Below, piece after piece: positions 13,498-31,076 of a stretch of 64,000 nt of DNA. Made by a program: the position numbers and the translations under genes. How positions within the stretch are numbered: the stretch's first letter is position 1; each line of letters starts with the position of its first letter. The notes under the pieces were generated by a model. The model was given only the letters and a program-made list of their open reading frames with translations. It was not told the DNA's origin and did no database searches. Source of the stretch: Ruditapes philippinarum (taxonomy: Eukaryota); assembly GCF_026571515.1 (NCBI RefSeq), contig NW_026859790.1:186001-250000 (forward strand), in the 5' to 3' direction.

Positions 13498-16310
13498 AGG
13501 ACCAGCTTTATCCTCTTTAGGAACTACTGGTGGTGGTTTAAAGTCAGGTTTGGGAGTGTCATCTTCCTCTTGCTCCTCTTCACCTTCTTCTCCTTCTTCT
13601 TTCTCGGTCTGATCTTCATCTGCATTCTCCTCAGACTGGAATAATAGCAGATGAGGATATTAATATCTAATTACAAAAATAATAGATATAGGATGTATGT
13701 CCAGTTCAGTGTAAGATCAGATTATATTTCACTGACTGAGCACCAAAAGATATACTTCACTAGTGGTGCAGGCACAAGTGAAATATGAGCTTTTAGTGTT
13801 TGTGAGGTAAAATATATTTCGATCTTACACAAAATAAATTTTCTTTTTATTATATACAAAGAAATGTTTAAAAAGACATTTTAACCTTATACTAAATGAA
13901 AATTGTGCTAAATAATAATACAATGTGACATCATTTACGACGTCACATCATTAAGTTGGTTTCCAGTACTATGCACACTTGTATTTCACTGAAACAATGT
14001 AATCGGCTAGAATTCAAAACAGTGAAAAATATCAAATTGATAATTTCACTGTTTCAAACAGTGAAATATCCTCTATATATTTCACTGATATATTTCTAAA
14101 AATCACTTAAAAGCATGTAATAAATGGATTTCTATAGATTGATATGTGATCAGATATTCATTTCAAACTTTCAATTTAATAATTTCATAGGAAATTTAAT
14201 CAGACCCACCTCTTCTTCTTCTTCTTCCTGCTCCTCATCACCTTCTCTGTACTCTACCTCTGCTACATAATAATTTTGCTCTGTTCCAAAAAGTTTACCC
14301 CAGAACCTGACATGCTGAAGGTTATGTGTATCTACCAGAGTTTTTAGTGCCATCCAAACTCTGATGACCTCTTCTCTGTTCAGACCAACTCCAGCTTGTT
14401 CAAAGTAGAAGCAGAGTTCCATGAGATTTGGTAGTGGAGTTTCAGCATCTTCATCTTGTTCTTGGTCACCTTCTTCTCCCTCTCCTTTCTGTATATACAA
14501 GTAAAATACATTACAATTTGTATGATGTAGTGTAAAAAAAAATCATTTAATGATTTGAAATATGCTACAGACAATATGTTTCATCATTAAAGCAATGACA
14601 TAATGTCTGTGCGAATTAGAATATCTCATGAATGTAAATATATGCTAGCTGATAAATTAACATATTATATGAATTACAGGTACTTATATATACTTTTCAG
14701 ACATAAATATTATGTAAAAAACAATCTGAATAAAAGTGTTGGGCAAATGAAAATTTATGATCTAACACTTGACATGCTGTCTAGCTATATATTTAACCAT
14801 AGATATATAATGTGCTCCTAATCCTTTTGAGCTAGTTATTATTTAACAGAAATACAAACAATATGAAATATATTTAATATTAACTAAGCATTTTATTGAT
14901 TTATAGAGATTTCTCAGCAGGATGATATGTGATTGCATATATGTGAAACAGTCTTAAAACAGGGTTTTCATGATTAACCGATTGGCCATCCAAACCATCG
15001 GTTAAAATGCTGTTAAAATTGGTTGTATTTTCAGCCTGTATATTAAAGTATCACCCTTAACCCTTGGCAAAATCAGTTGTTTTCTTTTGAGCATCTGTTG
15101 CCTCAGATGAAAATGAAAAACCCTGTTTAAACTTGTCAGATATGATAATTGTGAAAAGAACAATATTTCACAATGGTCAATTCAAACTTTAATAGTGATC
15201 ACACTATTGTAGATATGGTTGTGATAAAGCTGAAATATGATTTTGCTTGATTTTATATGACAGAACAATGCAAAGTTTTTAAAAGAATATTACTATTTTG
15301 ATGTAAATAAAACTAATGAATCAAAGTTTTTATCCATGACAAAAATACTTACAAGTACTAGATTAATATAAATGTTTGTAAATCAAATAAAACACTAACA
15401 CTGATTAACCCTTATTTATCTTTTACAGCTTTAGAGATGGAAAAACATGGTCTTACAGCAAAAAGTTTCCTTTGAACTTGAGCTAGCGCAACTTCTGTTG
15501 ATTGATCTATTTTATCTTGCACAGTGTCTACATTTGAAGTGAACTTTGCTCTTTTAGTGTGGTTACTTATATCTTCAAAAACATCGACTACATTTTCTGG
15601 TCTTTCATCTAAAATCTTTGTTAAACATGTACTCAGATGGTCATATCTGAAAGCAGAAATAAAAATCATTGTAGACAACACAGAGCTCACTTTTCATTGA
15701 CAAATAACAAACCTGGTTTTGTTGTACCTTAACACATGTTAGTAATAGCAGGGTTTAGGCATGTCTAATGTAAACATGATGATGTTAAACAGTGAAATTA
15801 GTTTTCTAAATTTGTTTTGCTCTAATGAAAAAGTTACCATGTATTAGAATTTTTATTCATATAGATGTAAATCTTGATCCGGCAATCTTAAAACTAACAA
15901 TACCTTATCTGTATTGAATCACTAATTCACGAAAATCCGAGTAATTATTACAGCCCAGCCTTAGTTAATTTTTTAAAATAAATAGGACTGCTATAAAGAA
16001 ACAGATAGCCCAGAAAATGTTCATGGTGTGATGTTTAAGGGAGAGGGATCAAATTTTCCTGGTGTGGGATAGCAAATACACCAAGTTGAATCATGTAGAA
16101 AAAAATAATAATTAAATTCAATAAACAGTAGTCTACCTGCTGTGAAAATATATGAATTTAAGACGAGTAAATCTATTAACATGATATAAGTAAATATAAT
16201 TTAATTCAATAAACTTACAGATTGTATCCAGTTTCTGTACTTGTTTGTAATAAATATGCTTTTGCATTTGCATATTCTTGTTCTTTAGGATTTATGCTTG
16301 GCGTATCCAT
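11220..16310 (-). CDS. RSPH4A: Radial spoke head protein 4/6 homolog (RSPH4A/RSPH6A family), ~522 aa, 9 exons
   Basis: Exons 16310-16219, 15646-15457, 14488-14210, 13635-13467, 13198-13101, 12759-12618, 12331-12222, 11926-11667, 11448-11220, all GT-AG and phase-consistent. Motifs: [28 protein letters not shown]...[67 protein letters not shown]. Confidence 0.95.
12915..13048 (-). mobile_element. tRNA-derived SINE fragment in an RSPH4 intron
   Basis: Minus strand ggggagcagtggcctagtggataagg...gagttcgaacc (A and B boxes), then agtactg..ttccaggaagcagact. Confidence 0.65.
14960..15125. mobile_element. Short non-autonomous TIR element (hAT-like CAGGG ends)
   Basis: cagggtttt ... aaaaccctg termini; no clean TSD. 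Confidence 0.5.
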
Positions 16311-18987: not shown

Positions 18988-21900
18988 ATGCTTTCAAAGA
19001 AGAAAGATTCCTCAGGGTTGAATGATGGTATAGCTGGGAAGTATGTTAAAAGAGACACTCCCCCAATACTAAGATGTAAGTTGTGTTTTGTTAGCTTAAT
19101 CAAGAAAATAGTGATGCTTTCCTACATGTCTTTATGTCAATGTTTGCATTAGTATTTACACTACCCTTGCAATATTTTGTACAGCATTCAAATTACACCA
19201 AACACTAAAACATTTGCTTGTTACTTCAAACATAGCTGTAAGATCATAACTAGAGGTCACTTTCCAATCCCCATAATTTTAAAGTTTTACATGCATTATC
19301 AGTCTTCACATCTACTGAAGCCACACATGCCTTTGGAGTGAAATATAATTTAAGGTCACTGTAGAAGACTTGTAACTAAGGCATATATTATGTGCCCCAT
19401 ACTAAATTCCATCCTTTTGTGAACAAAAATTTCTTGTGAGCAAAAAGTTTTGTGTGAAAGATCAGTCAAAACTTCTTAAGTTATTCATTTGGATCTTCAC
19501 AAATGGCTTGCTCATTTCAAATGAAATTATACATTATCCAGGGCAGGGTCTTGTTTTATATCCAGCAGGATTATAGTTGAACATGCTGTTCTACTGACAA
19601 TTTTATTTAAATATAATGACAAACTAGACATGTATGTTCTTAAGCTAAGATAGAAAATGTGAGTATGAAGGTACTTTAAAATTTGCACAAACATGATATA
19701 GATGTAGAATATTGTCAAAACTCACTTTATCTGTTAGAAAATACAGTGAAATCTTACAAAATTGATATACTGATGAGGATTGGCCAGAATGGCTATACCA
19801 TGATTATGTTATAATTTTATAATTTATTGTTGTTGTTTTTTGTAATTTATACATTATTATTCTTCTCTTGTAGCCTACCATCAGCCAGTGAAACCTCCTA
19901 CAGGCCAAAGAAGATCTGGAGTTAAAGCTCCTGCCTCATATATACCACAACAGGCAGTCAGTTCAGCTGCCAGCTTCCCCTTCATTAGTAAACCAACAAG
20001 TACAAGACCTCAAAGTCAGATAGAAACTGTACCTAGGGAGTCTTTAGTGAAAGTCCAGCGGTCTGTGCCAAGTGCTTCATCTGTGATAAACCATGAGAGA
20101 CAAACTCAGTCACCTGTCTCTCAACAAGTTCTGTCTCAACCTAATTTGTCAAACCAACAATTAGTCACCTCTCACCCTGTTTCTAATCTTAATACAGATA
20201 TGCTATCAATAACTAAAGAAATGCATAGACTAAGTGTAGATTCTGCCTCCCTGGAGCAAGCTAGAGCAATGAAACAATTCTCATCACAGTCTAGCACATC
20301 ATCTGGAATATCTAGTGCTGGTTCCGGTATTACAAAGTCTGGGTCAGCAAGTTCTTTACAGGGAACAAGCAGTAGTAGAAATACTGGTTCCCAACATACA
20401 GGTGAAACAGCTTATGAAAGTGCTGGTGCCCCTGGTTCTGCACAGGGTTATCAGCCAGGGTACCAGCAAACTGATGTGCACAGTGGAAATTTCAATGTTG
20501 TTCAAGAAGGTAAAATGTTATCACAGCTTATCAAATTTGCTAGGAATATATATGGACATCACAAAACATTTAGTAATAATTCCAAAAATAAATTAGTAAT
20601 GCTGAAAATGTGAATTTTTTCTTTTAAGTGGTTTTACTTCATTAGTAAACATATCCTGGATAGATAAAATGCAGTGACACAACCAGTTGCTATGTGAAAT
20701 ATATTTTGATTGCTAGTATTAAACATATTTTTATACCCCTGCACAACAAAGTTGTAAGGGGGGTATACTGGAATCAGATTGTCCGTCCGGCGTCCGTCGG
20801 TTTTTTCTTGTCCGCCCAATAACTAAAGATTCCTTTGACCCACAGTCTTCATATTTGGCATGCAGGTTAGTCTTGATTAGTAGATGACCCCTATTGATTT
20901 TGAGGTCACAAGGTCAAAGGTCAAGGTCACAGGGGCCTTGACTTCAAAAAGCTTGTCCGCCCAATAACTTAAGATTCCTTTGACCCACAGTCTTCATATT
21001 TGGCATGGAGGTTAGTCATGATAAGTAGATGACCCCTATTGATTTTGAGGTCACCAGGTCAAAGGTCAAGGTCACAGGGGCTTTGACTTCAAAAAGCTTG
21101 TCTGCCCAATAACTTAAGATTCCTTTGACCCACAGTCTTCATATTTGGCATGGAGGTTAGTCATGATTAGTAGATGACCCCTATCGATTTTGAGGTCACA
21201 AGGTCAAAGGTCAAGGTCGCAGGGGCCTTGACTTCAAAAAGCTTGTCCGCCCAATAACTTAAGATTCCTTTGACCCACAGTCTTCATATTTGGCATGGAG
21301 GTTAGTCATGATTAGTAGATGACCCCTATTGATTTTGAGGTCACCAGGTCAAAGGTCAAGGTCACAGGGGCCTTGACTTCAAAAAGCTTGTCCGCCCAAT
21401 AACTTAAGGTTCCTTTGACCCACAGTCTTCATATTTGGCATGGAGGTTAGTCATGATTAGTAGATGACCCCTATTGATTTTGAGGTCACCAGGTCAAAGG
21501 TCAAGGTCACAGGGGCCTTGACTTCAAAAAGCTTGTCCGCCCAATAACTTAAGGTTCCTATGACCCACAGTCTTCATATTTGGCATGGAGGTTAGTCATG
21601 ATTAGTAAATGATCCTTAACCTCTGATTTGGCAGGGAGGTTGTCCTTGAGTTCTAAATGGCCACTGTTGATTCTGACAAAGTGGTATGCGGGGGTATTCA
21701 CGCCATGATAGTGGCAGTTCTAGTTTTATTTAATTTTCTTGTAACTTTGGCAATGTTGCAAATATGAATGTTTTCTTTGACTTTAATCTTTTATAAACTT
21801 AGATATTTACCAGACTAAATATTTGCAATACATCAGTAAAGGAAGATGAGTAAAATGTCCAGTATATTTGATATAATTAAATTTTGATTTTTTATATTGA

Positions 21901-24900
21901 AAATGGATGGTTTGACTGGTACTTCACTGAAATTGTAATCTACATGTATGTTTTAAGTATTGTATCATTTTACAGAACAAGATGAAGAGAGTCAGTATGG
22001 TGCAAGTTATGGTAACGAGGGCGGTCAGGTGTATGATGATAACTATGAGATACAACAATACCATCAAGATATCAGAAATCATTACGCCCAACAGAATATT
22101 TCTACTCAACAAACATTAGGTCAACCACAGAGTTCTGATGTACATACTGTTACAACTTCAGGTAATAATTCAACAACAAACAGTCATATATATGTTTCAG
22201 ACTCAACAACATACACATGTATATGTATGAATATAATAATTATACTGGGTTTAGACTTTGATTTACCCAACTTTTATACTAGATATTGAATGTTAATATT
22301 AAAGTGAAAAAGTAAAATATTGTTACATGGTCCCTATTGAAATCGCATAGTTCTGGTAAAGTTTAGGAAAACAAAATGAAAGGCATTCAAAAAACATGTA
22401 TTTAGCTCATGGTCAAGGTCACATTTGTGTAATATATTTCATCAACTGCTTGATTGTTAAATCAAGTCGGCGGTTCTGTCATTCCTAGATAGATTAACTT
22501 GGCATAAATGTGTTGGACATTATGACACCATGCCACATGTAAGCATCAAGGTCACTTTTGTTTGTTCAAAGTCTTGATATGAATAAATAGATGTGTTTTT
22601 ACTTTGTCATTCATGAATACTTCTTGAAATAATAATAAAAGAGCAGGTTTTCAGCTTAAAAGTCAAGGTCACGCTAAGACTTGGTAAAATATCATAAAAC
22701 AACCTTGATCGTTGTATCTGGTCAACAATTCTGTCATTTTATGGATAGATTTGAAAATGATAACTAGGCATAATTCTGTTGCACTTGTCACACAGGAATT
22801 CAAAGTTAACAGCTAGAAAGGTGAATGGATGTATTTGGGATGTCAACATTGATGGCTTTTTCTTTCATTCATAATTTTGCATACTGATAATGTTTTATGT
22901 TAAATGCTCAATATAGTAAACATGCAGTAAGTCAAAGGCTACCATTCAGCTTTGGGTGCATTTTTAGCTCGACTATTCGATAAGAATAAGTAGAGCTATT
23001 GTAGTCACCCGAGTGTCCGCGTCGGCGTAACCACTTATGTTAAAGTTTTGTTGTAATACCTCAAATATTTTCAAAGTCAAATGACATATGGCTTTGAAAC
23101 TTTGCACACTTGTTCACCATCATGACCCCAATCTGTAGACAGGAGGAGGTAACTGTAACAAGCATTTTGACAGAATTATGCCCCTTTTTTGACTTAGAAT
23201 TTATGTACATGTTTGCATACTATCTCATATTTTCATATTCTATTGACATCTGGCTTTGAAACAAGTTGAAATATTATACTCTTTTTTGAGAGCATAATAG
23301 GACTCTTTCCAAGGCCTATAACATGGATTTAAAGAAAAAATTTGCCCTTTTGTAAACTTAGAAAATTTTACATTATCAAGACTCTTTTACTATCAAGCAC
23401 TAAGATGTTGCTGTCCTACTGACAGCTCTTGTTCTGTTCCAATATGTGCATACTATAGTAAATTTCACCAAGACAAGGGACATTATAACTTGGAACACTT
23501 GATTATCATGACAAAGGGCAATACCCTAATAACAATATATAATAACATGAGTTAAGCCTCATTTAGAATATTTTGTCTAAAACTGGTTATTTAGGAAATC
23601 ATCAAAGATATTGTACACAATCTTGGCATACTTGGGGACGACTCACTAGGACAAATGACATTATTCAGTATTTCCAGATTTTTAAATTTATTTTAAGGTT
23701 GTCTGTTTTGGTGGTTGATTGCTGCAGCATCAGTCTTTGTAGACATGCAAAATATCAATGTGACACTTGGAATGCTTCCATATCAGACAAGACACAGTAG
23801 TTAGACAAGGGGCATTATTCTGAAAGCTGTATTTGAGTTATATCCCTCATATATACTTCAGATGAGCGTTGGGTGCTCTCATCTTTAACAAACAAGCACT
23901 GGCATTGTCTGTAGTGCTCTTGTATTGGGTTTGAGAGCTAGTTTAATGGGTCATAACAATATTCTTTCCCAACCTCACAAGACAAGACAAGCTTTATTTT
24001 GCCAAAACCATTCATACTAATTCAAACCTAGAGATTTGTATTAAACATCAATCAACAAAGATTTTATACAGTCTATACAGTTTATTATAAAAACATAATG
24101 CATGCAGAATAATAAGAGTAATTTAATGAAAGACAAGTGAAATACAATAAATATTATATACATTATTTACACAATAGCACAAATAATTAGCACATTTATC
24201 ATAAATAACAAATTTACATAACAAAACATTAACAATTATGACATATCATCATTGACACAAAATCTTGACACAAAATCTAGTATTAACTAGGAAATGCATT
24301 GCAATTAGCCAGTTTTTGTCAGATTTGTCTCGAAATTTACATACACTTTTGAAAGACATACAACATATATATTGCACATGTTACAGAAAAAATGGACTGA
24401 ATCATTTATCACAGAAAAAAAAATCACAGAAAAATATTTGATATGAAATAATGCCACTTGATTATCACTAATGTCATCATATCACAAATTCAACATTCTG
24501 ATGGTAGATACACCTAACATGTAAAAATGATCTTAGATATTGTGTCAGTAAATTTACTAATTTGCAAAATAACATAGCACAATTTTAGTTATTAGGTCAC
24601 ATAAATATATATCAACAATATTTGGTTGTATCTAAGATAGAGGAGAGTTGTTGGATATAGTAAGCGTTATCCTTGTCTGGTTTACTGGCATCTCGTGCTA
24701 GCTGGTGACATATGTCCATTAAACGACCTTCCATCTCTTTCTTCTGTTTCTTTGGCCTTGTGTTGTTGCTACGGTTACGTTTGTTGGCATACCATGATTT
24801 AACCTGTCCCAGGGTAATTCCTCCACGTTTAGCGAGATCTTCTTTTTCAGCTTTAGTAGGGTATGGGTTTTCTAAGTGTTGTTCATACCACTCATTCATG

Positions 24901-27900
24901 ACTTGTAGAGCTTTGTTACTGAGAGGTTCGTTGTGACGACGACGTTTACTATCTGAAGATATCTCACTTTCATTCTTACGTTTAGCAGCTTTTACTGCCT
25001 CAGCTTTTGTTTTCTTGGCAATTTGATAATCTGCCATGGTTTTGTATTTTGGACCATTTGTATCAACTAGAGGTTTATGAAGAGTAGATTTAAGATAGCC
25101 ACCAGGTTGCATTAATACGCTTTCTGATTGGATGTCACTGCACTGAGGTTTTGTTAAAAATCTTGGAGTTGGAATTGTAAATGTTTGAGGCACAAATTGT
25201 TGAGGCACATTTTCCTTGTTATTTTGGGGAATGTCCATCATTCTAAGAACTGGTGGAGGCTGAATTGGTTGATGTTGAGGGGTTGATGTTTGTTTTTGTC
25301 GGAGATGTTTGCCGTTCCCATCTTGTAGCTGGATTACCGGAGATGCGTTCAAGTCTGAATTATATCCACTATCATGTTTGATGTTATTTGTAGATTTATT
25401 TATTGACTCCTCAAATGATGTTGTACAGTTATAGTTCATTGCTAGAGAATGGTTTGGTCTCGGAGGAGAATCGAGTTGGTTGAGCGAGTTGAGAGCCATC
25501 AGGTACTCTGGTGTTGAACATCGTGTAAACTCTAGACCGGCTGTGTTCAGGTTAGCTAGTGGATCATGGTGATCTATAAGTTGTTGAGGAGTGTCTGGTC
25601 TGTCGAGGAATGGTGTCTGGCTGGGTACAGGTCGATCCCACACATATTCTGGTTTCCATACTGGTGCCCCAATACAGTAGTTCCCGACATAGTTATGAAT
25701 GTTAACACTTTGATGATATGTGATAGTATTGGGGTAAACAAAGTCACATGATGGGTTGTAATGTGGCTGGTTAGTTGGATATTGATGAGGCACTACAGCT
25801 GGTTGAACACATGTAGATACTGGTTTGATAGCTGATACTGGTTGAATAGTGGCTGATACTGGCTGGATAGTGGCTGATACTGGCTGAACAGCTAATTCTG
25901 GCTTCTGATGGGCTGAAATAATAATTAATTAATTAGATATGTCAGTTTTTTATTTAAAAAAATCAATGCAAAGTAATATATTATTAGACTGTAACTATGA
26001 TCAACATAATTAATCTGTGTATTGTTGACATTGACAGACTGATGAAAATGCCTGATCATATAAACAGGCTTATGACATATTTCTAGAAAAATAATAAAGA
26101 GATTTTGTTTGTTTATTGAGCATAATATACATGTATAACAGAAATAATCAAATAATTCTTTTTACAACATAGTTTGTGTCACTGTGTATTTTTTTTTTCA
26201 ACTTTATAAAAAATCAGATGTAGGATGTTCACAGATGGCAAAATTTTAAATTTGATTTTATTTCAACACATGGCTAATGTGCCTTGGTAGCTGTGGATTG
26301 GTGTTCAAAACCATATCATTGCACATTGTGATCATAGCATATAAATGTATTCTAAAGTAAATTAAATACAGTTGTCAGGAATCTAGATATGTAAAAATAT
26401 ATGAGTATAGGTGATCACAACTTACCTTTATTATCATCAAGATGATCAAGATCATTATTGTCCTCTGATATAGGAGAGAATGTCCATGAACTAAAGCTCA
26501 CTGTACTAGATGGTCGACTCATATCTGCCCCACAATCTGTCACATCATTGTCTATAGATGAATATAGATCCTCTAGTGCTACTGAACTCAATTTACAATC
26601 AAATGTTAAATCACTCAGGTCCTCCATCTTAGATTATTGTATCAATAAATGGTGATAATTTATCTCGATATTTATTCACAAGTTCCTTTTAATGCACTGT
26701 CTATAATCTTTTCCTGAGGTGTTGTTAACATGTACACTTTGTTCTTTGTGTAAAGATATTTTGAATTTTTTCAGTGTCAAAGTTCATATTTAACTAGAAT
26801 TGGTAATTGTTAAAGTTCTTTCTATTGGTCAATTGTCCACAGTTCAATATTTTGATTGGATAATGGAGTTAGCTTGTATGAAAATTGAGTGATGTATGCA
26901 GTGATTCAATGAGGTGTGAAATACAGAACTGTGCACCTTATGATTGTTTGTAGATTGGGCTTGCAAACAGATTAGGAAAGTGTTTACTTAACTGTCAATC
27001 AGAAATCAATCATCCATTGACAGATTATCAATTAACTGTTTGGCCATTCATTACTCAATAGTGGGACACAATTCTATCATTTATTACTGATAGAATTATT
27101 TTTCCAGGTTGTGAAATTAAAATATAGTAAATTATAATTTTTTAAAGAAAAACAAATATATTTAGATTATTATTTTTTTTACATTTCATTTAGAAGATAT
27201 TATTATGTTGATCTATTTTTTAATTCAAAATTAATAAATCAATTTTTTATTTTTCTTTACTCCCATTTCTGAAAAAAAAATAGCCTCAGAAAGTATATGA
27301 TATTTTCATTTGACTTTGGAAAAACATTTGAAAAGTTAAAGTTGCTATTTCAAGACATACATACATATTTAATGATGCAAGTTGTTGCAGGTTCCTACCA
27401 GATTTACAGTTATGACCTTACTGTTTATCTAGCTGTAAATTACTTTGAGCATTGTATTGTTATAGCTCTTTATTAATATAAATTCCAGAAGAAAATTTAT
27501 TCCAAGGAGGGGGTTATCTAATAAATTATCTAAGGCTCCAGATCTTCATCCTGATTGCTTGCTTAAAGGCCCATTATGTCTAGAAGTGCTATATTTTTGA
27601 TCTTTTAAAAACTTTATCTTTTTGGTGTCTTGTTACAGTTTCCGAAAACATACTCATCAAGACTCATTTGCTAGAAACACAAACTATCATTTGCATCTTT
27701 AGTTCTGTTGGTAATCATTATAACTGTAGTTTATTATTATTTTGTATGGAAATCAAAATACTACATTGTTTACATTTTGCTACCTTAAAGACATAACTGC
27801 ACATTCAGTGCCACTTTTTTCCGCTTTTAAACATGTAACATGCTCTAAATTTGTTATTAAAACATTATTGAACGCATGTTTGCCATTTCTAAAGAATTTT

Positions 27901-30900
27901 ATACATATCGATTTCTAAGGCATAATGTGCCTTTAAGACATATATAGCCTGTATACATGTATATATATTTATATTTTACAGCGAGTTCAAATTTTATGGG
28001 TCATGATGAAATGGCATTGCCGACAGGTTGGTCAGTGGACTGGACATTCCGAGGTCGCAAGTATTACATTGACCACAATACACAGACAACACATTGGAGT
28101 CATCCTCTAGAGAAGGAAAATCTACCAACAGGCTGGCATAGGATAGAATCAAAGGAGTATGGTGTTTATTATGTGAAGTAAGTATACAATATGCGCTTAT
28201 TTTCCAACTTTTCAGGATTTTAAAGTAGACTTTCAAATAAAAGTGAAGTACTTTCATGTACCTTTATTTTTCCCTTTTATTAGTAGCACTTTATAATCAT
28301 ATGTAGCATTTTAAAATGACCTATACTGTGTTGGTGTGCCGTAAAAACAATGAAACAGACAAGAGATCAGTTTTTAGACCAAGTAATTTTTAAAGTTCAA
28401 GAAAACTAGTGAGAGTAGAAATGTCAGTTAAGTAAATAATCCTTTTTCTGCTGCATTTCTTATATACCGTAGACTTTACGTAAACTGTCCATATCAGTTC
28501 CAGGAATATCAAGATGTTTAGAATAGCACTGCGTATTTGTAATTTTACTAATATACTATCTGTTAGATTGACCTTGGCAATTCTTATACCCATTCAATAT
28601 TTTTACAGTGTTTATCTGAAATAAAAATGTTTAGCTTTAATTTAATCTTACTTATTTGTAAAACAGTACAATGTACAAAATTTTGAGTTATTTTGTTTGT
28701 ATATAAAAGACGGATTTATTATAAGATATTTTGTAGAGGTTTGTGATATATAAATGTTTAAAATCATTACAGTCACTACACAAAGCAAGCACAATATGCT
28801 CATCCATGTTCTACTGTGATGTCATATCAATATGGTCACCATAGCAACCAGTTACCAGTTACATCACAAGCTCAGCCACGTGGGAACCTGGTACCTGCCA
28901 ACCCCTATCTCAATACAGGTTTGTATATATTAGTAATAAATCATGGTAACAGAAACTGTAAGTTATATTTCCAGTGTATATGTAGGGCTCAACACAACAT
29001 TCCTTAGTCATGATAGGTTTACAGTGAACCCTTTAATTGTGAATTAAGTTTACAGCATATATGTTATTCAAAACAGATCTTTAGATCCAGTAACACATGT
29101 AACTTGATTTGATATTCATTCAGTAGAATTTGGTTCAGTACAATTTGATGAGCCTTGCCCCCTCACTACTGTGGGTTCTAACAGGAACTTGGATGTGAGG
29201 AAGCTATCCAGGTAGCTTACAGAATGCTGGTGATTCTACTCAGGTATATTTATAATGCACAGATGAGCATCTGAGGTAAAGCTGGAAAGTTGACATATGA
29301 ACTATACTGTGTTGGTGGGACATAAAACCCAACAAACAAACAAAAATGTATCAATGAAACTGTATATTAAGATGCTTTATTTGATTATTATAAATATTAT
29401 GCCATATAAGTATATGCCACGAGGGTAAACCTCCTGACGACACCTTAGAAAATTACTGTTATCCATATGTTTGGTTTCTGGTAGGGAAGGGAAGTAATTC
29501 TTCATAGACTCTTATATACTAGAATATAGAGTTATACCCCTTGAAGAAAATTTTGATGTATTTTTCCTGTTATGTGATTCATCTGTTGTTTAAATTTATT
29601 GACAGAGATTCCAGAATGGTTAAGAGTTTACTCAAAAGCACCTCCAGAGCATGACCACAAGTTGAAGGTATATTGTTTATATGATTGATTAGTGTTTATA
29701 GAAGTTAAAATTCAGACACAATACAATTATATAAGTTATACTATCACAGAAAGTTTAGGAAAGAAGAGAAATATTTTATCAGCTCATTATTACCTCATCT
29801 TTTCAAAGACAAAGTAGAACTATTGTCATGACCAACTCAGCAGCATCCAGCACTGAGAAAAGTGGGGCCCACTGCTCCTTGGACAACTCTTGTTCATATG
29901 AAATGTAACTTCTTCTAAATAGTTATATTACTCTGTAACTCTGCTATTAATTGTTGGTGGTTGTAAGAAAGGCAAAGTTCATGCTAACAATAACTAATTG
30001 TGGTAAATACAATGTTCTCATTTCAGTGGGATTTGTTCCAGTTAAATCAGATGGAAACGTTTGATGCAATGTTGAATCGTTTATGTAAACAAGAACTAGA
30101 AAAGATTGTGATGAGTTATGAAAGATATCGAACTGCTTTAAATCGTGAACTTGAACGACGGAGACAAGAAATGCCAAAAGATGATGCTGATAATCAGTCC
30201 AGAACAAACAATGAAAAGGACAGACAGACACCTGTCACTAGTGGTGCAGTGCAAGTGTCAAGGTCAAATTCTTCAGCTAGTGTCAAAAGTCAAGGTCAGG
30301 CTTTACGTGATCAAACTGTGCAATCTAGTGAGAGTGGTCTGTTCCAACATGATCAAGGTACTATGTATGAGAATGAGAATATTTTACAGATGCAGAGACA
30401 ACTTCAACAACAACAACAAGAGTTAGCCAAGCAACGACTGTTGGCACAAATGCAAGAACAACAGCAGTTGCAACAGCAGCAACAACATTTACAACAACAG
30501 CAACAACAAATGCCTAGTCAGGAGCAGCAGCTGCACTATCAGTATATGTTGCTACGGCAACAACATTTACAACAGTTACAACAACAACAACAGCAGCAGC
30601 AACAACAACAACAGATTTCTCCTCTCCACCAGCAATATCAACAACAACAAGCAGCTTATCAGCACCTGCTGCAACAACATCACTATCAACAACTCCAACA
30701 GTTATATCAACAACAACAACAACAACAGCAGCCTAGTCAGGCCCAGTATGTTGTTTCTCATCCAAATATTTTGATGACACAAGGTCAAATGGTATCTAAA
30801 GCACCGGTTCTCGTCTCACAACAGTCTAACACACAAGTGTCTGGTAACCAGCAGATGTTTTATCAAATGTCAGGCCAACAACAAATGCAGTCCCAGCAAG

Positions 30901-31076
30901 TTGGTGCTCAACAACAATTACAAGGTCAAGGACTTTTGTCTCAACTACAAGGTCAGGGTCAGCAGATGTTACAGTTGTCAGGACAACAAGTTCAGTTAAC
31001 TCCTCAACAACAGCAACAACTTACACCAGAACAACAACAACAACTGTTAGCACAAAATATAGAAACAAAAGTTTAG
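18988..31076 (+). CDS. SAV1: Protein salvador homolog (Hippo pathway scaffold; 2 WW + SARAH) with long Q-rich C-terminal extension, ~787 aa
   Basis: Exons 18988-19075, 19874-20509, 21976-22161, 27982-28177, 28773-28918, 29606-29667, 30027-31076 are phase-consistent. N-terminus MLSKKK...[13 protein letters not shown]; WW1 [32 protein letters not shown]; WW2; [22 protein letters not shown]; SARAH KWDLFQL...[23 protein letters not shown]. Confidence 0.95.
20728..21725 (+). mobile_element. Helentron/HINE (DINE-1-like) non-autonomous element with ~5.6 internal 145-bp tandem repeats
   Basis: 5' tttt-atacccc...ggggtat hairpin, (gtcc)n microsatellite, units at 20951/21096/21241/21386/21531, 3' ggggtat plus gcca..tggc hairpin plus ctagtt. 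Confidence 0.85.
22961..23433 (+). mobile_element. HINE-like element, short copy of the 164-bp-repeat family
   Basis: Shares its 5' end (tttttagctcgactattcgataagaataagtagagctattgtagtcacccgag) and 3' hairpin (gctgtcctactgacagctcttgtt) with 40175-41460. Confidence 0.85.
24081..24171 (-). promoter_or_regulatory. Putative polyA signal with adjacent CPE and two Pumilio elements in the homeobox gene 3' UTR
   Basis: Minus strand: TGTAAATA (24171-24164), TGTATATA (24162-24155), then TTTTTAT-AATAAA (24093-24081). Confidence 0.5.
24612..26627 (-). CDS. TALE-class homeobox transcription factor, spiralian-specific (SPILE-like) type, 500 aa, 2 exons, nested antisense in SAV1 intron
   Basis: Exon 1 26627-26426 (donor gtaagt) and exon 2 25912-24612 (acceptor tttcag) join in frame (1503 nt). 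Homeodomain at ~24757-24945: [63 protein letters not shown], with the TALE loop and PYP. No MEIS/PBC/IRO-box motif recognised. Confidence 0.88.
26760..26960 (-). promoter_or_regulatory. Putative promoter of the nested homeobox gene with clustered CCAAT boxes
   Basis: ATTGG on + (CCAAT on -) at 26799, 26824, 26855 and 26954, 170-330 bp upstream of the ATG. Confidence 0.5.
29150..29345 (+). mobile_element. MetaSINE-like SINE, truncated and degenerate
   Basis: tgtgaggaagctatccaggtagcttac...ggtgattctactcagg...aaagctggaaagttgacatatga...taaaacccaacaaac. Confidence 0.75.

What the first reader, a model, noticed from the sequence alone, without database searches (positions are those of the whole stretch)
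23990..26960. Complete spiralian-type TALE (SPILE-like) homeobox gene nested antisense inside a Salvador intron
Seen: an intact 500-aa two-exon ORF with canonical splice sites, upstream CCAAT cluster and polyA signal, lying wholly within the 5.8-kb SAV1 intron (22162-27981) on the opposite strand. The homeodomain has the TALE PYP loop and helix 3 [12 protein letters not shown] (A50, K52, and an unusual Y49 in place of F), with no flanking MEIS/PBX/IRX motif. Established: spiralians have fast-evolving lineage-specific TALE genes (SPILE) expressed maternally and in cleavage, which pattern blastomere fates. Inference: this is such a gene, moved into a broadly expressed Hippo-pathway host, possibly exploiting its open chromatin or causing transcriptional interference. 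It keeps an intron, so a DNA-level move is more likely than simple retroposition, and Helentron-like elements lie nearby in the same and the previous intron.
Basis: partly seen in the sequence, partly recalled or inferred. Interest (0 to 1): 0.85.

Follow-up and report, generated by a model that had tools for sequence, protein, structure and literature searches.

The report
Clam SPILE-E homeobox gene inside Salvador
This is the Manila clam's single copy of SPILE-E, a known maternal spiralian TALE homeobox gene; it does sit antisense inside an intron of the Hippo-pathway gene Salvador, whereas in two related animals it sits beside the unrelated gene BDP1.

Summary
An intact two-exon, 500-aa minus-strand gene (26627-26426 and 25912-24612) lies wholly inside a 5.8-kb SAV1 intron. 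It matches NCBI model XP_060605402.1 ("uncharacterized", Ruditapes philippinarum) exactly.

It is not a fast-evolving, lineage-specific copy. It is the 1:1 orthologue of the SPILE-E / TALE-III clade (NfSPILE-E, CgTALE3, PfTALEHD11, MvSPILE-2). That clade is single-copy in molluscs and is maternally expressed in limpet and mussel.

New here:
- In two independent metagenome contigs from related animals the orthologue is intronless. It lies 1.5 kb from the Myb exon of BDP1, on the opposite strand.
- The clam's own BDP1 locus, on another contig, has no TALE gene. So the gene changed place between lineages. Which location is ancestral is unresolved.
- About 400 nt of CCAAT-box promoter and a 3'UTR block are conserved across the two contexts. 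That argues for a DNA-level move of a self-contained unit.
- The 513-nt intron looks specific to the closest relatives of Ruditapes, so it was not "kept".

Verdict: a new member of a known family with a modestly interesting relocation.

The parts
26628..27010 (-). Own promoter and 5' leader of the TALE gene. It holds four sense CCAAT boxes (26958, 26859, 26828, 26803) and blocks conserved with the orthologue's upstream region in L027.
   Evidence: CCAAT cluster unique in the window. (local alignment to L027:700-1187 gives z = 8.7 against shuffles; controls give z 1.1-1.5).
26426..26627 (-). Coding exon 1 (residues 1-67 plus the first base of codon 68). It encodes the conserved N-terminal MEDL...DLY...SWTFSPIS motif.
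25913..26425 (-). 513-nt GT-AG intron. Intron positions 269-405 are a piece of a dispersed repeat.
   Evidence: at least 46 other copies at 69-82% identity, often as inverted pairs. The intron is absent from the L027 orthologue.
24612..25912 (-). Coding exon 2 (residues 68-500 plus TGA). It encodes a disordered region with short conserved motifs (RCSTPEY 198, DSGYNS 248, NKEN 299), the homeodomain, and a conserved C-terminal helical extension.
24756..24944 (-). TALE homeodomain (residues 391-453) with the PYP loop and W48-Y49-A50-N51-K52-R53.
   Evidence: Pfam; PBX/Exd 1.7e-14; own-genome hit L013; Exd chains, TM 0.86-0.87, rmsd 1.1-1.3.
23990..24611 (-). Probable 3'UTR. AATAAA signals at 24086 and 23998. 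Block 24133-24241 is conserved with L027 3262-3373 and holds TGTAAAT(A) motifs.
   Evidence: (z = 7.2). The transcript end was not verified with RNA.
22162..27981 (+). Host intron of SAV1 (5820 nt), donor CAG|GTAATA and acceptor TTTTACAG|.
21993..22161 (+). SAV1 exon immediately upstream of the host intron.
   Evidence: P0054 residues 253-311, 75% identity.
27982..28157 (+). SAV1 exon with the tandem WW domains, immediately downstream of the host intron. The 3' limit is approximate.
   Evidence: Single copy in the genome.
22961..23433 (.). High-copy interspersed repeat inside the host intron, about 560 nt beyond the TALE poly(A) signal.
   Evidence: 85-93% identity, thousands of first-look candidates, tandem sub-units in some copies.
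27563..27942 (.). Second high-copy repeat, between the TALE promoter and the SAV1 WW exon.
   Evidence: 74-84% identity, thousands of first-look candidates.

Best explanation
The locus is the Manila clam (Ruditapes philippinarum) orthologue of SPILE-E / TALE-III. This is the single-copy, PADRE-less member of the spiralian-specific TALE homeobox genes.

It is a compact, self-contained transcription unit of about 3 kb:
- a CCAAT-box promoter;
- two exons split by a 513-nt intron that appears specific to the closest relatives of Ruditapes;
- a 3'UTR of about 0.6 kb.

The protein is mostly disordered, with a few invariant short motifs. It has a Pbx/Exd-like TALE homeodomain whose recognition helix runs into a conserved C-terminal helical extension. 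It should therefore act as a sequence-specific DNA-binding transcription factor.

By analogy with limpet NfSPILE-E and mussel MvSPILE-2, I infer that it is transcribed in the oocyte from its own promoter and supplied maternally to all early blastomeres.

In this clam the unit sits antisense inside intron 3 of SAV1. In two related animals the intronless orthologue sits next to, and probably inside, BDP1. So promoter, ORF and 3'UTR changed place together as DNA in one of the lineages.

Shown: gene structure, family assignment, nesting, different neighbourhood, conserved promoter. Inferred: maternal expression in the clam, direction of the move, any interplay with SAV1.
For: Gene model: it equals NCBI XP_060605402.1 at 100%, with consensus splice sites.

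Family:
- The homeodomain matches the named E-clade / TALE-III sequences printed in the supplements of PMC8524836 and PMC6118893, about 73% to PfTALEHD11 by my count.
- P0037 (Pinctada) starts with the same N-terminal sequence as the published PfTALEHD11 (as far as the supplement excerpt shows) and hits the clam gene at 3e-26. Mytilus, Saccostrea, Dreissena and Patella proteins align over the N-terminal, central and C-terminal motifs.
- The own genome holds one such gene among about 20 TALE-class homeodomain hits (26 Homeobox_KN matches in all, some SIX or other classes).
- In the homeodomain tree it falls in a SPILE clade (95/85 support) apart from the clam's own Pbx, Meis, Tgif, Irx and TALE-I.
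- There is only one homeodomain and no other Pfam domain.

Fold: Exd/Pbx homeodomain, TM 0.86-0.87.

Nesting: P0054 maps on both sides of the gene.

Relocation:
- L027 and L028 carry the orthologue 1.5 kb from a Myb_DNA-bind_7 exon on the other strand.
- Six L027 BDP1 exons are collinear with the clam BDP1 on contig C13962. There is no TALE match within 18 kb 3' of its Myb exon.
- There is no SAV1 match on L027-L032.

Conserved promoter and 3'UTR.

Maternal, ubiquitous expression of clade members: PMC8524836, section read.
Against: - No RNA evidence from the clam was obtained.
- The homeodomain alone does not resolve the E clade as monophyletic (open polytomy). The assignment rests on full-length similarity.
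- L027 and L028 are unnamed metagenome contigs.
- L027 has only 1187 nt upstream of the gene. Residence inside BDP1, rather than beside it, is inferred.
- The ingroup polytomy leaves the direction of the move open.
Confidence: 0.85

Rival explanations
1. It is a recent, fast-evolving, lineage-specific SPILE duplicate carried into the SAV1 intron by a Helentron or other transposon.
For: High-copy repeats lie on both sides inside the intron (22961-23433 and 27563-27942). A 145-nt satellite lies in the previous intron. Part of the gene's own intron is repeat-derived. The location does differ from L027 and L028.
Against: It is the only E-clade gene in the genome. It has 1:1 full-length orthologues from Patella to Dreissena. 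The two flanking repeats are different families with different ages, not the two ends of one element. No Rep or helicase ORF lies nearby. No BDP1 fragment travelled with it.
Confidence: 0.07
2. It is a divergent paralogue of a canonical TALE family (Pbx-like), since the nearest solved structures are PBX1 and Exd.
For: Best PDB sequence and fold matches are PBX1/Exd. Pbx is sister to the SPILE clade in the homeodomain tree.
Against: There is no PBC domain and no other Pfam domain. The clam has its own Pbx homeodomain exons elsewhere (L023/L024). The gene falls inside the SPILE clade at 95/85 support. It shares non-homeodomain motifs only with E-clade genes.
Confidence: 0.02
3. The nesting is an assembly artefact, or the gene is a silent relic that is not transcribed in this position.
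For: No reads could be laid. The contig comes from a fragmented assembly of 15,874 contigs.
Against: There are no gaps in the window. The ORF is intact, with homeodomain plus C-terminus 96% identical to the closest relative against 84% overall. The promoter and 3'UTR are conserved. SAV1 and the TALE gene are each single copy.
Confidence: 0.05

Closest known systems
SPILE-E clade / TALE-III (NfSPILE-E of Nipponacmea fuscoviridis, LgTALEHD28, CgTALE3, PfTALEHD11, MvSPILE-2; Morino et al. 2017 as cited in PMC8524836; Barton-Owen et al. 2018, PMC6118893)
   Same: The homeodomain signature is RHN(E/Q)PLN...NPYP.K..KE..A..GGI...QVKSW.ANKRNR.NNT. There is a single homeodomain and a single copy per genome. 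It shares the N-terminal W.FSPI motif, the RCSTP(E/D) and QDSG(Y/F).S motifs, and the C-terminal ...ICHQLA...IQQLS... extension. Length is about 460-600 aa.
   Different: F49 is replaced by Y (only here and in the closest relative). A 513-nt intron interrupts the ORF, which is uninterrupted on L027. There is a local 21-nt coding repeat. It resides inside SAV1. Expression in the clam is untested.
PBX1 / Extradenticle homeodomain
   Same: TALE three-residue loop, a small residue at position 50, K52-R53, and the same fold (rmsd 1.1-1.3 A over 55-57 residues, 42-44% identity). Helix 3 continues into a C-terminal helical extension.
   Different: No PBC-A/B domain. N54 in place of I54. Outside the homeodomain the proteins are unrelated. 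The clam has a separate Pbx gene.
Nested antisense genes in introns of animal genes
   Same: A complete gene with its own promoter and poly(A) signal lies within one intron of a host gene, on the opposite strand.
   Different: The orthologous unit is found next to a different gene (BDP1) in related animals, with the same opposite-strand orientation. So either the host or the guest changed.

Membership tests
TALE-class homeobox | Three extra residues between helix 1 and helix 2 (the P-Y-P loop) and a match to the Homeobox_KN profile | tested here: met
   (PF05920 at 9.6e-14, 51.4 bits against a cut-off of 24). (PBX/Exd/Meis/TGIF are the top matches).
SPILE (spiralian TALE) clade | The homeodomain groups with non-canonical spiralian TALE genes, apart from Pbx, Meis/Pknox, Tgif, Irx, Mkx and TALE-I | tested here: met
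   a clade of 24 rows at 95/85 support, sister to the clam's Pbx. Meis, Tgif, TALE-I and Irx fall on the other side. No Mkx was in the set.
SPILE-E / TALE-III | The homeodomain forms a clade with named E-clade members | tested here: inconclusive
   E-type rows fall in an open polytomy that also holds the D-like and A/C-like rows (63 columns only). By eye the homeodomain is closest to PfTALEHD11, CgTALE3, NfSPILE-E and Pv_TALE-III.
SPILE-E / TALE-III | Similarity outside the homeodomain to named members (N-terminal, central and C-terminal motifs) | tested here: met
   P0037 starts with the N-terminal sequence of the published PfTALEHD11 (as far as the excerpt shows). Orthologues align at 57-98% coverage with E from 1e-26 to 1e-236. 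Invariant columns lie outside the homeodomain. All five anchors have L013 as their best single own-genome match.
SPILE-E / TALE-III | One homeodomain only and no PADRE domain | tested here: inconclusive
   One homeodomain hit in the ORF. No PADRE model was available, so its absence was not formally tested.
SPILE-E / TALE-III | Single copy per mollusc genome | tested here: met
   L013 is the only E-type homeodomain among 26 Homeobox_KN matches in the assembly.
SPILE-E / TALE-III | Maternal transcript present in all blastomeres up to the 16-cell stage | not testable with these tools
   Reported for MvSPILE-2 and NfSPILE-E (PMC8524836).
Nested intronic gene | Host exons on both sides belong to one mRNA | tested here: met
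   a single 786-aa SAV1 orthologue maps to 21993-22169 and 27978-28157 in order on the + strand. Host identity.

The most novel reading that the evidence does not exclude
The SPILE-E unit (conserved promoter, ORF and 3'UTR, about 3 kb) is a portable maternal gene cassette. In heterodont bivalves it moved as DNA from an intron of BDP1 into an intron of SAV1 and gained a partly transposon-derived intron in the lineage that holds Ruditapes. In both places it lies antisense to a broadly expressed housekeeping or signalling gene, which suggests that such a host setting is favoured for its oocyte expression.
Probability: 0.15. Interest if true: 0.55.

Novelty: new member of a known kind. Interest (0 to 1): 0.35.

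Why it matters
- It gives a family name to an "uncharacterized" clam gene and supplies a heterodont representative of SPILE-E, a maternal factor in spiralian cleavage.
- It shows that this single-copy gene travels with a recognisable CCAAT promoter. That yields a short candidate regulatory sequence to test for oocyte expression.
- It documents one clear change of genomic neighbourhood (SAV1 against BDP1) and one intron presence/absence difference within bivalves. Both can be dated once chromosome-level assemblies are compared.
- It does not change the picture of SPILE biology.

Tried and rejected
The neighbourhoods of the Dreissena, Mytilus, Saccostrea, Pinctada and Patella orthologues could not be read.
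- A scan of genome contigs found nothing.
- A second homologue search restricted to the homeodomain gave no named SPILE proteins. Cluster look-up gave no species names for the ENA/Logan hits.
- Searches for BDP1 fragments in the SAV1 intron, and for TALE remnants at the clam BDP1 locus, found only shared high-copy repeats.
- No SAV1 exon was found on L027-L032.
- Earlier-findings search by words was blank. Papers on clam or oyster homeobox genes hold nothing on this nesting.
- dN/dS was not computed because no DNA from a close relative could be fetched.
- An AU test of L027 + L028 monophyly was considered and dropped, because neither outcome would fix the direction of the move.
- The spliced protein was never joined by me. 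Exons were searched apart by reference. The fold used the database protein P0001 as first row of alignment A1.
Full report
**1. The observation**

The window is G000:C8277:186001-250000 of Ruditapes philippinarum. On the minus strand there are two coding pieces.
- An ATG at 26627 opens a 67-codon piece that ends at AAG|GTAAGT (26426/26425).
- After a 513-nt, 26%-GC intron with a CTGAC branch-like site and the acceptor TTATTATTTCAG|, a 433-codon frame runs from 25912 to the TGA at 24614-24612.
- 202 + 1301 nt give 500 codons plus stop.

The NCBI protein XP_060605402.1 ("uncharacterized protein LOC132757921", P0001) maps at 100% identity to exactly these two pieces. I searched the exons apart, by reference, and did not join them myself.

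Pfam finds only Homeobox_KN (9.6e-14) and Homeodomain.

Four sense CCAAT boxes lie 176-331 nt upstream of the ATG. This is the only cluster of 4 or more in 200 nt on either strand of the window. AATAAA signals lie at 24086 and 23998.

**2. The host gene**

A 786-aa protein (P0054) was found with the upstream + strand exon as query. It maps collinearly on the + strand at 18988-19077, 19867-20508, 21993-22169, then 27978-28157, 28711-28923 and 29596-29667; residues 649-705 match 30693-30863, inside the last ORF 30000-31076.
- The exon after the gap carries the tandem WW domains of Salvador (7bqf, 1.1e-29).
- The last exon carries the SARAH helix (6ao5_B 4e-10, Drosophila Salvador 6bn1_B 1e-8).
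- The splice sites are CAG|GTAATA at 22161/22162 and TTTTACAG| at 27981/27982.

So the TALE gene lies wholly inside a 5820-nt SAV1 intron, on the opposite strand. The SAV1 WW exon is single copy in the assembly. The window has no gaps.

**3. What the gene is**

The nearest solved structures are PBX1 and Exd. The AlphaFold model superposes on Exd chains with TM 0.86-0.87 and rmsd 1.1-1.3 A. It is not Pbx, for these reasons.
- The supplements of PMC8524836 and PMC6118893 print named homeodomains. The clam sequence is closest to the E-clade / TALE-III set: NfSPILE-E, LgTALEHD28, CgTALE3, PfTALEHD11, MvSPILE-2, Pv_TALE-III.
- The hit P0037 (Pinctada imbricata) begins with the same N-terminal sequence as the published PfTALEHD11. 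The Saccostrea, Mytilus and Patella hits resemble CgTALE3, MvSPILE-2 and the limpet genes.
- These proteins and the clam protein share motifs far from the homeodomain: an N-terminal W.FSPI, RCSTP(E/D), QDSG(Y/F).S, mostly NKEN, and a C-terminal extension ...ICHQLA...IQQLS....
- The clam genome holds 26 Homeobox_KN matches. By their homeodomains they are Meis, Pknox and Pbx exons, Tgif, seven Irx-type exons, TALE-I, a two-homeodomain SPILE-B type, a SPILE-D type, three A/C types, some non-TALE hits, and only one E type, which is this gene.
- In a homeodomain tree the gene falls in a SPILE clade (95/85 support), sister to Pbx and away from Meis, Tgif, TALE-I and Irx. With 63 columns the E clade itself is not resolved.
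- For every named anchor the best single own-genome match is this gene.

The model predicts a largely disordered protein. It has the homeodomain, a recognition helix that continues to about residue 476, and a last helix at 484-495.

Y at homeodomain position 49 occurs only in the clam and its closest hit P0002. All 16 other orthologues aligned have F.

**4. What is known of the clade**

PMC8524836 reports one E-clade gene per mollusc and no PADRE domain. It reports maternal expression of MvSPILE-2 in all blastomeres to the 16-cell stage, as in the limpet. I infer the same for the clam.

**5. Other genomic contexts**

A metagenome scan gave two useful contigs.

L027 (11.5 kb) is genomic DNA.
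- It carries the orthologue P0009 (50% identity) as one uninterrupted 492-aa ORF at 1188-2666.
- On the other strand it carries six exons of a BDP1-like gene. The nearest is a Myb_DNA-bind_7 exon (4.3e-11), 1.5 kb beyond the TALE stop.

L028 (3 kb) comes from another data set and a clearly different animal. It shows the same Myb exon (9.5e-12) at the same distance and orientation.

The Myb exon covers only profile positions 14-46 of 88. No further conserved exon lies between it and the TALE gene. The TALE gene is therefore probably inside the next BDP1 intron, but this is an inference.

In the clam, BDP1 is on another contig (C13962). Its exons are collinear with those of L027. There is no TALE match in the 18 kb 3' of the Myb exon.

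Conversely, no SAV1 exon is found on L027-L032, and no BDP1 fragment is found in the SAV1 intron.

So the gene changed neighbourhood between lineages. In a full-length tree the clam group, the L027 group, L028, Dreissena and P0007 form an unresolved polytomy. The direction of the move is therefore open.

**6. What moved**

The 400 nt upstream of the ATG align between the clam and L027. Conserved blocks include ATTGATT.CTG, AGTAAACACT, TTTCACACCTCA, CCAATCA, TGAAC.TTGACA.TG and CTTTACACA.AG. The local score is 8.7 sd above shuffles, against 1.1-1.5 for controls.

A 3'UTR block (24133-24241) is also conserved, at z = 7.2.

A retrocopy would not carry its promoter, so the move was at the DNA level.

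**7. The intron**

The intron is absent on L027.

The ORFs P0002-P0004 come from the clam's closest relatives, a 100/100 clade. They diverge from the orthologous N-terminus exactly at the junction, and there they read through codons that spell a pyrimidine tract plus CAG. This suggests that they share the intron.

The Lottia entry LgTALEHD28 spans 1800 nt, which is the size of a 599-aa ORF like that of Patella. This hints at an intronless state there too.

Part of the clam intron (positions 269-405) belongs to a dispersed repeat that is often found as inverted pairs.

I read the intron as a likely gain, with moderate confidence.

**8. Repeats**

Inside the host intron, 22961-23433 and 27563-27942 are two different high-copy repeats. 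The previous SAV1 intron holds a 145-nt satellite. I did not test whether these are Helentron-related. Nothing links them to the move.

**9. Verdict**

The family assignment is sharpened to SPILE-E / TALE-III, a known and conserved gene, so this is a new member of a known kind. The nesting is real. The change of neighbourhood, the conserved portable promoter and the intron difference are new but modest findings.

Expression, interplay with SAV1 and the polarity of the move remain untested.

Noticed in passing
G000:C4975:398075-398167 and 398696-398785 (L023/L024): The clam Pbx homeodomain exon occurs twice, about 620 nt apart. Both copies are open and very similar. They may be mutually exclusive alternative exons.
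   Followed up: no
window 20807-21612: A 145-nt satellite, 5.6 copies at 97% identity, lies in the SAV1 intron before the host intron.
   Followed up: partly
window 25831-25893: A 21-nt coding tandem repeat (three QPVSATI-like heptads) at the start of exon 2. It is not present in this form in the other orthologues.
   Followed up: partly
window 25120-25170 (residues 248-253) and about 25015 (residue 299): In the DSGYNS motif, D, S, G and the last S are invariant in all 18 aligned orthologues, including the limpet. NKEN is conserved in most. This bears on the separate note about a degron cassette.
   Followed up: partly
window 24133-24241: A 3'UTR block conserved with L027 3262-3373. It contains TGTAAAT(A) motifs that resemble Pumilio sites, which would fit a translationally controlled maternal mRNA.
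   Followed up: partly
window 30000-31076: The long Q-rich tail of SAV1 ending in ETKV is also present in the 786-aa orthologue P0054 from a related species, so it is not an artefact of this assembly.
   Followed up: partly
window 14171-15690 (minus strand): Two exons of a radial spoke head protein gene (Pfam Radial_spoke, 1e-33 and 9e-15) lie upstream of SAV1.
   Followed up: no
L027:1-120: The metagenome contig ends in a 25-nt tandem repeat, which is probably why the assembly stopped 1.2 kb upstream of the TALE gene.
   Followed up: no
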